This document shows, piece after piece, positions 12,905 through 20,080 of a DNA stretch of 64,000 nt. Within the stretch, counting starts at the first letter, position 1, and the number at the start of each line of letters is the position of its first letter. Location: positions 248,001 through 312,000 of the IMG/VR virus record IMGVR_UViG_3300025121_000011. One strand, written 5' to 3'. The notes beneath the pieces were generated by a model. It did not search any database. It was given only the letters and a program-made list of their open reading frames with translations, and was not told the DNA's origin. The translations under genes and the position numbers were made by a program.

Positions 12905-13171
12905 ATGATGCTCACTTTCGTAAGCAAGCTCTCTACCCCGACGCGATATGTCGTCCTTTGCGGGGACAAGATCAGTATGATCAAGGCCGTTCGGTTGCTC
13001 ACAGGTTCTGGGTTGAAGGAGGCAAAAGATGCTGTTGAAGCCGAGAACCCGGACATGAGGGTTGGCTTTGATATCTTCATTGTAAAAGTCTACTATCAGG
13101 AGGCGCATGCACAAGAGATTCGTGATGTCGTCAATACGTTGACGCGGGTTGGTTTCGTGCTTCCTTATTAG
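12905..13171 (+). CDS. ribosomal protein bL12 C-terminal-domain-like protein
   Basis: DKISMIKAVRLLTGSGLKEAKDAVE matches the bL12 CTD consensus [24 protein letters not shown]. Confidence 0.8.
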   Translation: MMLTFVSKLSTPTRYVVLCGDKISMIKAVRLLTGSGLKEAKDAVEAENPDMRVGFDIFIVKVYYQEAHAQEIRDVVNTLTRVGFVLPY

Positions 13172-13186
13172 CACGAAAGAACCAGG

Positions 13187-13215
13187 AAGCCCCGGCAGTT
13201 GTTTCGCCGGGGCTT
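13187..13215 (+). terminator. hairpin terminator (near-identical copy at about 15925-15953)
   Basis: AAGCCCCGGCAGTTGTTTCGCCGGGGCTT followed by a T-rich tract. Confidence 0.75.
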
Positions 13216-13342
13216 TCTTCTGTGTATCACTCTTGGCATATAACTTGCATTAAGCAAAGAGCGTGCCAAGTTAAGATATCGGTGGCAATAAGTTAACTCT
13301 AAAAAGATATTTTATGAAGTAATAAAGAGCTAAGAGGTAAAC

Positions 13343-13615
13343 ATGGATACACCCATTCCGTTTCCAGAGATTGCGAATCCGACGCCATTTCAAGTGAAGG
13401 GGGTAAACATCTGGTTTCTTCCGGGTGAGGATCATTTCATCGCAATGGTACATCTGTCTGTATCCGAGCGTGACTTGCGAACTTGGCACTGGCACAATAC
13501 AACCTCTTGCACCGGGAAGGATGAATGCAGTCGAGACGGTTTCTCATGGTATACCATGAGAAAAGAATCTGAAAAGGGAGAGGTGCTATACATGAGTAAT
13601 CACAAGGCGCTGTAA
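13343..13615 (+). CDS. hypothetical cassette protein
   Basis: Dyad, header and RBS upstream. Confidence 0.65.
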   Translation: MDTPIPFPEIANPTPFQVKGVNIWFLPGEDHFIAMVHLSVSERDLRTWHWHNTTSCTGKDECSRDGFSWYTMRKESEKGEVLYMSNHKAL

Positions 13616-13990
13616 CTCTAAAAAGATCTTCTCCAGAGTAAGAAAAGGACATAGGAGTCCAGAATGATTCGAAAGCATAGTGTCCGTGAAGTTGTAAAGG
13701 TCGCAGAAAGCGATTTCATGACGGAAGAGGAGAGGGCATATCGAAGTGATCGGTGGAGCCGGCGAAAGGGGAAGATGAAGGGGAAGGGGAAACAAGAGGA
13801 TCGCGGGAAAAACCGCGATTTTGATGAAGGGGGGTATTGAGAAGAGACGGGGAGGGGCACGGAAATCCGTGCCCTTCCTTTTGATATATAAGGTTGGCAT
13901 AGAACATGCATTAAGCAAAGACCGTGCCAACGTGTATACAGATAAGTCTAAAAATATATTCTTCGTAGTAACTAATCGACGGAGGTACCA

Positions 13991-14362
13991 ATGCGAACCA
14001 TTACGCGTATGTTTCTGATCCAGGGACTGTCAACCGTTGCCGGTGTCAGTGGTTGCACGATTCTGATCTCTGAGATTGCGTTCCTTGAGGGTATCGATCC
14101 GATGTCCCTGGTAATCCTGGCGATTACATCAATCGTATCTGGAGGGGCATCTATCATTCTGATCATGACGCTTCCCAAGGCTTCCAAGGTAGAAAGCTCC
14201 GCATATGTGGGCGAGGATACGGATGATATTGAAACGGAGGAGATGGCCGATCCTTATGCCTACTGGGATGCCTATGGTTCCGGAACCACTTACCCGGAAG
14301 ATCGGGAAGCTATCATCGGTCGCATCGGAAACAATGGAATCGTGGTACGATTCGGAAAGTAA
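13991..14362 (+). CDS. membrane protein with acidic C-terminal tail
   Basis: Two hydrophobic segments; GGAGG RBS. Confidence 0.65.
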   Translation: MRTITRMFLIQGLSTVAGVSGCTILISEIAFLEGIDPMSLVILAITSIVSGGASIILIMTLPKASKVESSAYVGEDTDDIETEEMADPYAYWDAYGSGTTYPEDREAIIGRIGNNGIVVRFGK

Positions 14363-14513
14363 TCTCAAGGGGCTTTGCCCTATTCAATGTGGCATAGAAC
14401 ATGCATTAAGCAAAGACTGTGCCAAGTCAAACACCGGCGGGAATAAGTTAACTCTAAAAAGATATCTTCCGAAGTAATGAATAGGTGTAAGGAAACAAAG
14501 CAAAGAGGCTCCT

Positions 14514-17557: not shown

Positions 17558-17566
17558 GAGGTTCTT

Positions 17567-17791
17567 ATGGCTTTTTCTTTTGATGAATACAATAATCGTC
17601 CTTATACTTTCATCGCGGATCAAGATGAAGTAGATGACGATTGGTCAGACGACGATGATGATTGGAGCGAACCCTCTGAAAATGATATGTGGGAATCGTT
17701 CCCTGATGATGATGACGACTACACGACGAATGACCCTGACAACGACTATTACATAGAACCCGACTACACGGAATCCAATAAGGACTACTGA
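17567..17791 (+). CDS. very acidic small protein
   Basis: D/E-dominated 74-aa ORF with GAGG RBS. Confidence 0.6.
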   Translation: MAFSFDEYNNRPYTFIADQDEVDDDWSDDDDDWSEPSENDMWESFPDDDDDYTTNDPDNDYYIEPDYTESNKDY

Positions 17792-17829
17792 TAAGGAATA
17801 CTGAGGGATTGGACATCATTGGAGCGAGA

Positions 17830-18330
17830 TGTCATGATGGTTCGCTCTACCCATGCCCCTTAAGTGGGTGTTACCAACAAGGAGTTAGGAATGTATAAGA
17901 ATAAGAATAAGAATAACTCTGGACGGGATTTATCCTGTTCACCAGCAGGATAAGCTGCTGGGAGCAAAGTAGGCCGTGAGAGCTTTGGATACCTTCTGTC
18001 TGACAGCAGAGGGCAAACGAAAAAGCAAGCCGAAAAGCTTGGTGTGAGGGATGCGAAGACAGAGACCTGTCAGGTCTGGTCGTTCACCTAAAACCCTCCC
18101 TTGGTCCGCCGTGTGTGCAGATTAACTTAAGAATGCGTGTCCGGATACGCAAACTGAGACACTGATGCGCACATAGGGTAAGCGGGCCTATTTTAGTAAC
18201 TAAAACGGAGAAAGTTAAAACAAAAAAGGAAATAAGCGATTCTGCCCTGGGTCTGATACAGTGGGGTTCGTCACTTAGAAGGTTCATAACCTCTTGGACG
18301 ACAACGACTGCCAGACCCAGGGCGTTTCAT
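17830..18330 (+). ncRNA. candidate structured ncRNA
   Basis: About 500 nt without a credible + strand ORF; perfect 12-bp long-range stem 18244-18255/18312-18323 and multiple hairpins. Confidence 0.45.
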
Positions 18331-18477
18331 TGTTTAAAGATTACTTGGCATGAGACTTGCATTAAGCAAATGTCATGCCAACGCACGTATAAGCATTTTA
18401 TACTCTGGCGGCAAAAGAATAACATCATCTTTAAAAATATATTCTTTGTAGTAACTAACATCTGAAAGGAGGCTGAG

Positions 18478-19350
18478 ATGGCAATGATTTCCAAAGATGA
18501 AATGCTTGCGCGAGTAGTTGACCCTATTCTTGAGGCAATGAAAGAGGGAAAGCTGCTATGGCTTCAAGGATGGAATGTGGGTGCGGGTGCGGGTCTCCCT
18601 TATAACCCGACCAAAGCATCTAATAAGCAAGCGTATCGAGGTGCGGTCAATAACATCTTGATGTGGTTTGCGTCCGCTGCTAATGGTTGGGGCGACCCTC
18701 GTTGGATGGGTTTTGCTCAAGCGAAAACAAAAGGATGGCGAGTTCGGAAGGGGGAGGAGTCGACCCAAATCTATGCTCCAATCATGGGTTCGTATCCGAT
18801 TGAAGAGAACGGCCAAAAGGTTTGGAGAAAATATGTCAAGGGCTTCAACCCTGTTCATGTTTTCAATGCCCAACAGGTGGATGGAATCCCCGCGATTGAA
18901 AAGGCTGGAACCTTGGATGTCTCCACCGGATATGCTGCCGCAGAGGACATGTATAAGGCTATGAACGTGCAAACGATTCATGGCGGTAATGTGGCTGCAT
19001 ATGCATATCAGGTTGACATCATTAGGATGCCGGAACCAGAAATGTTTGTGGGCGCAGATGAATACCACGCTACGCGCTTGCATGAAATGGGGCATGCGAC
19101 GGGGCACCCGTCTCGCATGGATAGAAGGATGTTCGGAACAGGGTTACAGGATTACGCTCAGGAAGAGCTTGTAGCGGAGTTGTTTGCTGCTTTCGCATGT
19201 GCAGACATTGGCGTATCCAAAGCTGAAATGACGCAGAATCATGCAGCATACCTCAAAAGCTGGCATGAGCGTCTAAGCAGGGAACCAAAAGCATTCATAG
19301 ATGCCGTATCGGCAGCATGGGAAGCTTTTGAGTTTGTTCGAAAACTGTGA
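18478..19350 (+). CDS. ardC: ArdC-family antirestriction/ssDNA-binding protein with zincin-like domain
   Basis: LPYNP..YRG..N..WMGFAQAK..GWRVRKGE; YHATRLHEMGHATGHPSRMDR; YAQEELVAE. Confidence 0.9.
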   Translation: MAMISKDEMLARVVDPILEAMKEGKLLWLQGWNVGAGAGLPYNPTKASNKQAYRGAVNNILMWFASAANGWGDPRWMGFAQAKTKGWRVRKGEESTQIYAPIMGSYPIEENGQKVWRKYVKGFNPVHVFNAQQVDGIPAIEKAGTLDVSTGYAAAEDMYKAMNVQTIHGGNVAAYAYQVDIIRMPEPEMFVGADEYHATRLHEMGHATGHPSRMDRRMFGTGLQDYAQEELVAELFAAFACADIGVSKAEMTQNHAAYLKSWHERLSREPKAFIDAVSAAWEAFEFVRKL

Positions 19351-19645
19351 TAGAGATTAATCTGGCAAAGAAGAGACAAGCGAAGAAGCTTGTTTCTTGC
19401 GTGAGATATTTGCATATGCACGCTTTGGAGTTGGTTCTTTTGTTTTTGGTGATAATTGTTTCGATACTGTTTGTTATCACCAGTTTTTAATAAAATAACG
19501 AGGTGCAGGGTTTGAGTTGGCACAGTTTTTGCTTAATGCAGTTATCGTGCCAATGCATACACACTAGTTTACTCTAAACTAGTTTACTCTAAAAAGATAT
19601 CCTCTGGAGTAACTAATGATTGTAATCCGCTAAGGAGGTGTTTTA

Positions 19646-20080
19646 ATGGCAAAGTTTCTGATCGACTTCCGTGATCCACCGAACTCCCTGGTCAAGTGTG
19701 TCAAGGCTCTTAAGAAGATTTCCGGAATGAGTTATAGGAGAGCAAAGGACGCCGCGATACTTACTGATCCGATCGTTGTGGAGATTCCGATGTTCTCCGA
19801 GAACAACGAAATCTCCCAAGGGATGATTAGGACTTGGTTTGCAGAGGAAATCGGTTGGACTATCATGGTTGGAAGTCCCAAAATGCTTCCCGACCGAACA
19901 GGACTCTTCACAATGCACTTTCGGAACGGATCCCGGATGGATTCGGTAAGGATTGAAGTGTTCGAGTTGGTGAACGATGGTAGTAGACCTGAGATTGATC
20001 GTTATTTCTTTTCCTATAAGGGAGATAGCCGTATGCAGAGCTTTTACAGCACGACCGATGACCACTATCTGACGGATTGA
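19646..20080 (+). CDS. protein with divergent N-terminal bL12-CTD-like helix-turn-helix
   Basis: SLVKCVKALKKISGMSYRRAKDAA. Confidence 0.5.
   Translation: MAKFLIDFRDPPNSLVKCVKALKKISGMSYRRAKDAAILTDPIVVEIPMFSENNEISQGMIRTWFAEEIGWTIMVGSPKMLPDRTGLFTMHFRNGSRMDSVRIEVFELVNDGSRPEIDRYFFSYKGDSRMQSFYSTTDDHYLTD

What the first reader, a model, noticed from the sequence alone, without database searches (positions are those of the whole stretch)
12905..20080. Three bL12-CTD-like cassette proteins alongside a GAC-like RNA
Seen: 12905-13171 and 15664-15909 carry the bL12 CTD signature (KIS.IKAVR..TG.GL.E.KDAVE) in a short protein lacking the bL12 dimerisation N-terminus; 19646-20080 has a diverged version. 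Established: the bL12 CTD recruits EF-Tu, EF-G and IF2, and bL12-like genes occur in some phages. Inference: with the 28.1-kb RNA, the phage may encode both protein and RNA mimics of the ribosomal factor-binding centre to redirect translation or block defences that sense EF-Tu or stalled ribosomes.
Basis: partly seen in the sequence, partly recalled or inferred. Interest (0 to 1): 0.6.

Follow-up and report, generated by a model that had tools for sequence, protein, structure and literature searches.

The report
Two stand-alone bL12-tail proteins in phage
A 335-kb groundwater phage carries two small duplicated genes that copy only the factor-grabbing tail of ribosomal protein bL12, a kind of phage gene already reported; the third claimed copy is not supported, and the nearby ribosome-like RNA is real but belongs to a separate, widespread phage RNA family.

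Summary
The window is bases 248001-312000 of a complete 335,169-bp phage genome from groundwater.

**The two supported ORFs.** ORFs 12905-13171 (88 aa) and 15664-15909 (81 aa) are real paralogues, 55% identical.
- Both pass Pfam's gathering score for the bL12 C-terminal domain.
- They keep helices 4 and 5 almost letter for letter.
- They align to true bL12 over 58 residues.
- They model as beta-alpha-alpha-beta-alpha-beta, with bL12 CTD as the best structural match.
- They have no N-terminal dimerisation domain.

**The third ORF.** ORF 19646-20080 is not supported. It has no family hit, and a genome-wide profile scan gives E 0.84.

**Genomic setting.** Each gene is its own unit of promoter-like box, ribosome-binding site, ORF and terminator. 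The units lie in a 24-kb GC-rich island of orphan genes that also holds an ArdC-like gene.

**The "GAC-like RNA".** It is real and belongs to a covariation-supported phage RNA family. The family also occurs in cultured jumbo phages and is absent from Rfam. None of 17 other phages carrying this RNA has a bL12-like gene above cut-off, so the two are not a linked system.

**Most likely function (inferred, untested).** The proteins act as soluble mimics of the stalk CTD and bind its partners.

**Novelty.** Stand-alone phage bL12-CTD proteins were reported in 2019, so this is a new member of a known kind.

The parts
12905..13171 (+). 88-aa stand-alone bL12-CTD homologue (paralogue A)
   Evidence: PF00542 at 33.6 bits against a cut-off of 25.9. 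BLASTP to true bL12 P0243 gives 60% identity over 42 residues. An AAGGAGG ribosome-binding site lies 5 nt upstream.
15664..15909 (+). 81-aa stand-alone bL12-CTD homologue (paralogue B)
   Evidence: PF00542 at 37.1 bits. PDB bL12 CTD at E 2e-5. BLASTP to true bL12 gives 48% identity over residues 10-67. AF2 model has pLDDT 70 with a b-a-a-b-a-b order. Best structural matches are bL12 CTD.
12856..12889 (+). Island promoter-like box (CTCTAAAAAGATAT..AGTAATAAA) ahead of paralogue A
   Evidence: One of 26-28 copies, all but one on the + strand inside the island. It does not match the sigma-70 consensus, and sigma-70-type sites are not enriched.
15619..15648 (+). Island promoter-like box ahead of paralogue B
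   Evidence: Repeat family D10, 85% identical to the copy ahead of paralogue A, and continuing into the RBS and start codon.
12797..12831 (.). Palindromic element TGGCAT-N5-TTGCATTAAGCAA-N-ATGCCA upstream of the box
   Evidence: Repeat families D5-D7. There are 19 copies genome-wide, all inside the island. Sequence read.
13187..13215 (.). GC-rich terminator-like hairpin after paralogue A
   Evidence: 11-pair stem with 8 GC pairs. Terminator-like sites number 19, against 8.2 +/- 3.0 expected in the region.
15928..15950 (.). GC-rich terminator-like hairpin after paralogue B
   Evidence: 8 GC pairs. It is homologous to the hairpin after paralogue A (repeat D12, 76% identity).
19646..20080 (+). 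144-aa orphan ORF claimed as a diverged bL12-CTD; not supported as a member
   Evidence: No Pfam, NCBIfam or PADLOC hit; only a PHROG match at E 0.058 to another part of the protein. hhalign probability 5.9%. Genome-wide profile scan E 0.84. No relatives beyond itself. The ESM Atlas model has pLDDT 0.49.
28121..28325 (+). GAC-like RNA: closing stem + H43-like hairpin + inserted arm + H44-loop-like hairpin. It lies in the same island but is a separate module.
   Evidence: LSU model match at 28139-28161, E 0.038. The same split pattern occurs in 23 IMG/VR contigs. RNAalifold covariation supports the fold.

Best explanation
Two recently duplicated, separately transcribed genes encode free-standing copies of the C-terminal domain of ribosomal stalk protein bL12. 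The copy includes beta1, helices 4 and 5, a lengthened beta2 region, helix 6 and beta3. There is no N-terminal domain, so the proteins cannot sit on uL10 in the ribosome.

The helix 4/5 face that bL12 uses to catch translational GTPases is kept almost unchanged. The most likely mechanism is therefore that the proteins act in trans as soluble stalk-CTD mimics. Made from their own strong units during infection, they would occupy the bL12-docking site on host proteins, most probably EF-G, IF2, EF-Tu or RF3, and so change how those factors reach host ribosomes.

Shown: homology, domain limits, conserved face, duplication and gene-unit anatomy. Inferred: the fold at medium confidence, expression, any binding, and any effect on translation.

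I hold the identity with about 0.9 confidence. The figure given below is for the mechanism.
For: **Homology**
- PF00542 is above the gathering score for both proteins.
- PDB bL12 CTDs match at E 2e-5, with 22 of 29 identical residues across helices 4-5.
- BLASTP to a true bL12 runs over residues 10-67 at 48% identity.

**Fold**
- With a 49-sequence alignment, AF2 gives pLDDT 70.1 and the order b-a-a-b-a-b.
- The eight best Foldseek PDB hits are all bL12 CTD, with probability 0.84-0.99.
- The best VIA-align hit is 1ctf: Z 7.0, rmsd 2.4 A over 65 residues, 31% identity.
- The best BFVD hits are phage proteins named as bL12-CTD-containing.

**No ribosome anchor, no phage-encoded partner**
- There is no NTD. 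TIGR00855 scores 27-31 bits against a cut-off of 84.4.
- The phage encodes no translational GTPase, uL10 or uL11, so any partner is a host protein or an unknown phage protein.

**Gene units**
- Each gene has its own promoter-like box, strong RBS and terminator.

**Literature**
- Phage bL12 domains keep the residues that contact uL11, EF-G and EF-Tu (PMC6375957).
- The bL12 CTD contacts EF-Tu helix D (PMC12179292).
Against: - No binding has been shown. The complex prediction with the EF-G G/G' domains gave no verdict.
- No RNA-seq run holds the locus, so expression is not shown.
- From my own knowledge, isolated bL12 CTD binds the factors only weakly. A decoy would need high concentrations, above all against the very abundant EF-Tu.
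- A general brake on translation would also hurt the phage.
- dN/dS between the paralogues is 0.71, so constraint outside the hairpin is loose.
- The same 30-residue hairpin and the whole domain occur in hundreds of non-ribosomal bacterial proteins of unknown function, so the motif is not tied to translation alone.
- On structure alone, ClpS, ACT and ferredoxin-like folds tie with bL12 within one Z unit.
Confidence: 0.35

Rival explanations
1. Counter-defence decoy. The free CTDs soak up host immune proteins that use the bL12 CTD as a docking point or carry bL12-CTD-type domains. Examples are stalk-captured RelE-type nucleases of type III CRISPR (Cami1) and conflict-system NTPases with L12-CTD arrays. 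This would protect phage translation.
For: - The genes sit in an island of orphan single-gene units with an ArdC-like anti-restriction homologue (ArdcN + MPTase-PolyVal) and a very acidic 74-aa protein.
- PDB 8phj holds Cami1 on a 70S ribosome with a bL12 CTD chain among the matches.
- Cami1 is cited as an L12-mediated interaction (PMC12179292). It is a cA4-activated CARF-RelE that cuts mRNA at the A site (PMC11229360).
- Bacterial proteins carry 3-7 L12-CTD domains fused to a KAP NTPase, a PNP_UDP_1 phosphorylase or LRV/HEAT repeats.
- L12/ClpS domain inserts are noted in vWA-MoxR conflict systems (PMC7159879).
- The fast divergence of the paralogues (dN/dS 0.71) fits an arms-race gene.
Against: - PADLOC gives no hit for any island protein.
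- The host and its defence systems are unknown.
- No anti-defence protein of this kind has been described in the papers searched.
- The island context rests on one annotated neighbour only.
Confidence: 0.25
2. A general protein-binding module with no link to translation. The bL12-type hairpin or domain serves as an adaptor for a phage or host partner unrelated to the ribosome, as it presumably does in the many non-ribosomal bacterial proteins that carry it.
For: - Of the best 150 of 2,132 profile hits, 148 are long non-ribosomal proteins with tandem copies.
- 27 of them hold 107 full CTD domains. The others hold hairpin-only repeats, often with membrane anchors or DUF6793.
Against: - The phage hairpin is closest to true ribosomal bL12: 22 of 27 residues are identical to gammaproteobacterial bL12 such as P0159.
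- It keeps every residue of the factor-binding face.
Confidence: 0.2
3. Substitute ribosomal protein. The phage proteins enter host ribosomes in place of bL12, as proposed for some virus-encoded ribosomal proteins.
For: A phage bL12-domain protein was detected in ribosome fractions after expression in E. coli (PMC6375957).
Against: - There is no N-terminal domain or hinge.
- The phage has no uL10.
- In the same paper the tagged phage bL12 could not be used to purify ribosomes.
Confidence: 0.04
4. Decaying fragments of a captured host rplL gene with no present function.
For: - dN/dS is 0.71 between the copies.
- There are no relatives outside this one phage population among 1.84 billion representative proteins.
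Against: - Both copies keep an intact frame, RBS, promoter-like box and terminator.
- The hairpin is far better conserved than the rest.
- Both genes are identical in contigs from several groundwater samples.
Confidence: 0.08

Closest known systems
Stand-alone phage bL12-domain proteins (Ralstonia phages RSB3 and RSJ5, Dinoroseobacter phage DFL12phi1, crAss-like cr50_1; Mizuno et al. 2019, PMC6375957)
   Same: - Small phage proteins (92-141 aa) in which the bL12 CTD spans most of the protein.
- The factor-contact residues are conserved.
- They are the best structural matches in BFVD.
   Different: - There is no detectable sequence kinship beyond the shared domain. tblastn over 50,697 phage records finds none of them.
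- Here there are two paralogues, a 10-12-residue insertion after helix 5, a huge-phage genome, and a GC-rich island of promoter-terminator units.
Ribosomal protein bL12 (L7/L12), e.g. E. coli 1ctf / 1rqu
   Same: - The CTD fold order is b-a-a-b-a-b.
- Helices 4 and 5 are near-identical.
- 31% identity over 65 aligned residues, Z 7.0.
   Different: - No NTD and no hinge.
- TIGR00855 scores far below cut-off.
- There is an insertion before beta2, and the C-terminal half is diverged.
bL12 domains embedded in large phage proteins (Salmonella FSL SP-058/076, Erwinia Ea9-2; here Enterobacter phages SABI and SonariX)
   Same: These are the only phage records hit by tblastn, at 38.8% identity over residues 13-79.
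   Different: There the domain lies inside a 710-aa hypothetical protein. Here it is the whole protein.
Bacterial non-ribosomal proteins with tandem L12-CTD domains or hairpin-only repeats (DUF6793-associated; KAP NTPase, PNP_UDP_1 and LRV fusions)
   Same: They share the same hairpin signature and, in 27 of the 150 best hits, the same full domain.
   Different: They have 3-14 copies per protein, carry other domains or membrane anchors, and are cellular rather than viral.
ClpS (N-degron adaptor)
   Same: A similar alpha/beta arrangement, with Z 6.0-6.5.
   Different: 4-8% identity and no ClpS family hit in Pfam. All of the sequence signal points to bL12.

Membership tests
Pfam PF00542 Ribosomal_L12 C-terminal domain | Score at or above the gathering threshold (25.9 bits) | tested here: met
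   33.6 bits (88 aa) and 37.1 bits (81 aa). Six-frame scan of the genome gives 32.9 and 36.4 bits.
Pfam PF00542 Ribosomal_L12 C-terminal domain | Whole-domain match (beta1-alpha4-alpha5-beta2-alpha6-beta3), not only the hairpin | tested here: inconclusive
   - The HMM aligns only positions 10-38 of 67.
- BLASTP reaches helix 6.
- AF2 gives pLDDT 70 with the right order of elements.
- 1ctf matches at Z 7.0, rmsd 2.4 A over 65 residues, but other split beta-alpha-beta folds tie within 1 Z.
Pfam PF00542 Ribosomal_L12 C-terminal domain | Conserved helix 4/5 surface (K65, V66, I69, K70, R73, L80, E82, K84 in E. coli numbering; the numbering and the roles are from my own knowledge) | tested here: met
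   The alignment gDKISVIKAVRSFTGLGLREVKDAVEDA against [28 protein letters not shown] has only conservative changes (V66I, K81R). The same residues are kept in the 88-aa copy.
Ribosomal protein bL12 proper (TIGR00855 equivalog) | N-terminal dimerisation/uL10-binding domain (PF16320) and hinge | tested here: not met
   No PF16320 hit. Only 11-20 residues precede helix 4.
Ribosomal protein bL12 proper (TIGR00855 equivalog) | Score above the NCBIfam cut-off (84.4 bits) | tested here: not met
   27.3 and 31.2 bits.
Phage stand-alone bL12-domain proteins (Mizuno 2019) | Phage-encoded, with the bL12 domain spanning essentially the whole small protein | tested here: met
   The genome is a complete 335-kb virus record with terminal repeats. 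The domain spans residues about 3-80 of 81.
Phage stand-alone bL12-domain proteins (Mizuno 2019) | Association with ribosomes or translation factors | not testable with these tools
   The complex prediction gave no verdict. Biochemistry is needed.
PF00542 membership of the third ORF (19646-20080) | Any significant match to the domain or to the paralogues | tested here: not met
   No Pfam hit. hhalign probability 5.9%. Genome-wide E 0.84. The PF00542 six-frame scan at E<=10 lists only the other two ORFs.
ClpS | ClpS family signature (sequence family match) | tested here: not met
   No ClpS family in the Pfam scan at E<=1. 4-8% identity in the structural alignments.
23S rRNA GTPase-associated centre (H42-H44), for the neighbouring RNA | H43 loop (1067 region), H44 loop (1095 region), closing helix, contiguous three-way junction | tested here: inconclusive
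   - Both loops are present and invariant in 18 phage sequences, and the closing stem covaries.
- H43 and H44 are separated by a 118-320-nt insert.
- The Rfam LSU model matches only 23 nt, at 16.4 bits.

The most novel reading that the evidence does not exclude
The phage builds a pseudo-stalk from separate parts. The GAC-mimic RNA would capture host uL11 and the uL10-(bL12)n complex, or factors that read the GAC. The free bL12-CTD mimics would capture whatever docks on the stalk tips. Together they would divert translational GTPases, RelA-type sensors or stalk-dependent defence nucleases away from host ribosomes.

The RNA half would then be a widespread, undescribed phage strategy, and the protein half an add-on peculiar to this phage.
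Probability: 0.07. Interest if true: 0.85.

Novelty: new member of a known kind. Interest (0 to 1): 0.45.

Why it matters
Phage-encoded bL12 domains have been catalogued, but their function is unknown. This case gives a very clean version to test:
- the proteins are CTD only;
- the factor-binding face is intact;
- there are two diverging copies;
- each copy has its own expression unit, next to an anti-restriction homologue.

A simple binding and translation assay would show whether free stalk tips act as a host-takeover tool or as a counter-defence tool.

The larger value lies in the by-product. The neighbouring RNA belongs to a large phage RNA family that imitates the uL11/uL10-binding rRNA. 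It is absent from Rfam 15 and is present in cultured jumbo phages, where it can be knocked out.

Tried and rejected
- **Complex prediction.** The 81-aa protein with E. coli EF-G residues 1-290 gave no verdict. This is neither support nor evidence against.
- **Expression.** No RNA run holds the locus. Laying contigs of four DNA runs showed only the same phage and no informative variants.
- **Close relatives.**
  - megablast against phages found none.
  - The word search with the 81-aa protein found only itself.
  - IMG/VR scans found only hairpin-level matches, which turned out to be full-length bL12 genes.
  - Encoding contigs are all the same phage.
  - An IMG/VR scan for the island's promoter motif found two unrelated contigs.
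- **Third ORF.** No relatives. ESM Atlas gave only low-confidence leads towards PF00542 clusters (score 0.76, TM 0.37), which I do not count.
- **First AF2 run.** With two sequences only it gave pLDDT 60 and was too weak on its own.
- **Known RNA families.** The Rfam gathering search of the window found only tRNAs. The LSU model on the whole genome found nothing at E<=10.
- **Literature.** Searches for a phage GAC or rRNA mimic found nothing relevant.
- **ClpS-like fold.** I considered and rejected it on sequence grounds.
- **PADLOC.** No hits for ten island proteins.

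
Full report
**Where the window lies.** The window is bases 248001-312000 of a 335,169-bp virus record with direct terminal repeats, judged complete. The same genome recurs in groundwater and soil metagenomes from several samples.

Most of the genome has 30-37% G+C. A block at genome 258-283 kb (window about 10.3-34.6 kb) has 43-48%.

**The observation.** The three ORFs exist as stated.
- The 88-aa and 81-aa products score 33.6 and 37.1 bits on Pfam PF00542 (gathering 25.9). The aligned part is profile positions 10-38 of 67, which are helices 4 and 5.
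- phmmer against the PDB finds E. coli, Thermotoga and other bL12 chains at E 2e-5 to 1e-3. The 29-residue alignment has 22 identities.
- NCBIfam's bL12 equivalog gives only 27-31 bits against a cut-off of 84.4. There is no N-terminal domain hit.
- The two proteins are 55% identical.
- They are the only PF00542 matches in a six-frame scan of the whole genome.

The third ORF (144 aa) fails every test:
- It has no Pfam, NCBIfam or PADLOC hit; its one PHROG match is insignificant (E 0.058) and lies outside the claimed motif.
- hhalign gives probability 5.9%.
- I built a profile from 107 full CTD domains and ran it over all 2,683 stop-to-stop frames of the genome. The ORF scores 7.2 bits, E 0.84, the same as a 40-aa junk frame.
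- It has no relatives.

**Is it the whole domain or only a hairpin?** This matters because an exhaustive profile search of 1.84 billion representative proteins gave 2,132 hits, but only the phage's own two proteins matched over their full length.

The rest of the best 150 hits are long non-ribosomal proteins with 3-14 tandem copies.
- 27 of them hold 107 complete CTD domains.
- The others hold a 30-residue hairpin-only module, often with membrane anchors or DUF6793.
- Some of the full-domain arrays are fused to a KAP NTPase, a PNP_UDP_1 phosphorylase, pentapeptide repeats or LRV/HEAT repeats.

For the phage proteins, four results point to the full domain:
- BLASTP to a true bL12 runs from residue 10 to 67 at 48% identity, with a 10-residue insertion after helix 5.
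- MAFFT aligns them end to end with 47 CTDs.
- AF2 on that alignment gives pLDDT 70.1, pTM 0.53 and the element order beta-alpha-alpha-beta-alpha-beta. A two-sequence run gave the same order at pLDDT 60.
- Foldseek ranks eight bL12 CTD chains first (probability 0.84-0.99, E 0.02-0.18).

VIA-align puts 1ctf first at Z 7.0, rmsd 2.4 A over 65 residues, 31% identity. However, ClpS, ACT and ferredoxin-like domains tie within one Z unit at 4-11% identity. So the fold class is shared, and it is the sequence that says bL12.

In the viral structure library the best hits are phage proteins named as bL12-CTD-containing, from a crAss-like phage and from Ralstonia phage RSJ5.

**Gene anatomy.** Each paralogue is a single-gene unit. 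In order, a unit holds:
- an upstream terminator;
- in many units, a palindrome of the form TGGCAY-N5-TTGCWTWAWGCAA-N-RTGCCA;
- a conserved box, CTCTAAAAAKATAT...AGTAAYTAA;
- a strong ribosome-binding site;
- the ORF;
- a GC-rich hairpin.

The box occurs 28 times in the genome, 27 of them on the + strand inside the island. The palindrome occurs 19 times, all inside the island. Sigma-70-type sites are not enriched, whereas terminator-like hairpins are (19 against 8.2 +/- 3.0).

Of about 30 island products scanned, only the two bL12-like proteins and an ArdC-like protein (ArdcN + MPTase-PolyVal) have any Pfam family.

dN/dS between the paralogues is 0.71.

**The RNA.** The unit at 27650-28590 has a box and a terminator, and no ORF longer than 57 aa. 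It folds with z = -3.9.

Rfam gives only a 23-nt match to the bacterial LSU model (16.4 bits, E 0.038). Reading the sequence shows more:
- GGTGGTTGGCTTAGAGGCAGCCATCC resembles H43 of 23S rRNA.
- AGCGTAATAGC, 134 nt further on, resembles the H44 loop. The rRNA numbering and sequence are from my own knowledge.
- Both lie inside a closing helix.

A pattern demanding both elements 118-148 nt apart hit 23 IMG/VR contigs. They have the same layout, and many sit directly beside tRNA genes.

RNAalifold on 18 distinct sequences predicts the closing stem, the H43-like hairpin and the H44-like hairpin.
- Every one of the nine closing pairs has compensatory double changes.
- One H43 pair is GC in 8 sequences, UA in 7 and AU in 3.

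Of about 124 IMG/VR loci holding the H43 21-mer, only three are contiguous true 23S rRNA. The others are of the split type.

Cultured jumbo phages carry the RNA unannotated: Serratia BF, Cronobacter GAP32, Pectobacterium CBB, Xanthomonas XbC2 and XacN1, and Pseudomonas pf16. In Serratia phage BF it fills an intergenic gap.

Rfam 15 has no family for it, and three paper searches found none.

**Are protein and RNA linked?** The evidence says no.
- In 17 records with the RNA, seven of them complete, none has PF00542 above cut-off. One has an 18.7-bit hairpin in a 127-aa ORF.
- tblastn of the 81-aa protein over all 50,697 phage records hits only two Enterobacter phages, where the domain lies inside a 710-aa protein.
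- Those two phages are not among the 42 listed of the 52 records matched by the RNA search; 12 records were not listed.
- The phage has no uL10, uL11 or translational GTPase of its own.

**Mechanism.** With no NTD the proteins cannot join the stalk. What they keep is the surface that bL12 uses to meet EF-Tu helix D and the other GTPases (PMC12179292; PMC6375957).

The best reading is a soluble stalk-tip mimic. I rate factor diversion at 0.35 and counter-defence at 0.25. The counter-defence reading rests on:
- the ArdC neighbour;
- the stalk-captured Cami1 nuclease (PDB 8phj);
- L12-type domains in bacterial conflict systems.

None of this is shown. The complex prediction gave no verdict, and no RNA data exist.

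**Novelty.** Phage bL12-domain proteins, including stand-alone ones, were described in 2019. These two are a new, isolated member pair in a new setting. The RNA family is the more novel item and deserves its own report.

Noticed in passing
window 28121-28325 (+), within the ORF-less unit 27650-28590; also L135-L144, L017-L130 and L147:1483-1775: A phage RNA family that imitates the 23S rRNA GTPase-associated centre.
- A covarying closing stem encloses an invariant H43-like hairpin (GGCTTAGARGCAGCC), an inserted arm of 118-320 nt and an invariant H44-loop-like GCGTAATAGC.
- More than 100 IMG/VR contigs carry it, often directly beside tRNA genes.
- Cultured jumbo phages carry it unannotated (Serratia BF, GAP32, CBB, XbC2, XacN1, pf16).
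- It is not in Rfam 15 and was not found in the papers searched.
   Followed up: partly
window 10380-34610: A 24-kb island with 43-48% G+C in a genome of 30-37%. It holds about 27 one-gene units, all on the + strand. Each unit has the box CTCTAAAAAKATAT..AGTAAYTAA and a terminator. Nearly all products are orphans.
   Followed up: partly
e.g. window 12797-12831, 13231-13268, 20133-20170; 19 copies: The palindrome TGGCAY-N5-TTGCWTWAWGCAA-N-RTGCCA lies between terminator and box. Each half reads like a sigma-54 -24/-12 element (TGGCAC-N5-TTGCW; from memory, not tested), on both strands. It could be a regulator site or a bidirectional promoter.
   Followed up: no
window 16053-16700 and 27650-28120: Two further box-led stretches have no ORF of 30 aa or more within 140 nt of the box. 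One ends at a terminator (16568-16594). The other is the 470 nt upstream of the GAC-like element. Both are possible further non-coding RNAs.
   Followed up: no
window 17511-17557 and 17567-17791: A 13-nt unit (AACAGAGTTACCC) is repeated three and a half times in the leader of a 74-aa extremely acidic protein (runs of D with W/E). That gene lies just upstream of the ArdC-like gene. It is a candidate DNA-mimic type anti-restriction protein.
   Followed up: no
window 18478-19350 (+): A 290-aa ArdC-like protein (ArdcN at E 5e-20 plus the zincin MPTase-PolyVal at E 9e-33). It is the only other island product with a known family.
   Followed up: partly
proteins P0003-P0150: A large set of bacterial non-ribosomal proteins has 3-14 tandem bL12-CTD domains or hairpin-only modules. 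Some are fused to a KAP NTPase, a PNP_UDP_1 phosphorylase, pentapeptide repeats or LRV/HEAT repeats. Others have membrane anchors and DUF6793.
   Followed up: partly
window 30224-30308, 33158-33233, 33343-33413: tRNA-Leu(TAA) and tRNA-Lys(TTT), both matching AT-rich codons, plus a third weak tRNA match (36 bits). All lie inside the GC-rich island, near the GAC-like RNA.
   Followed up: no
L003-L009 (IMG/VR contigs): These viral contigs encode full-length bL12 (122-125 aa, with NTD and hinge). I did not examine whether they are truly viral or host carry-over.
   Followed up: no
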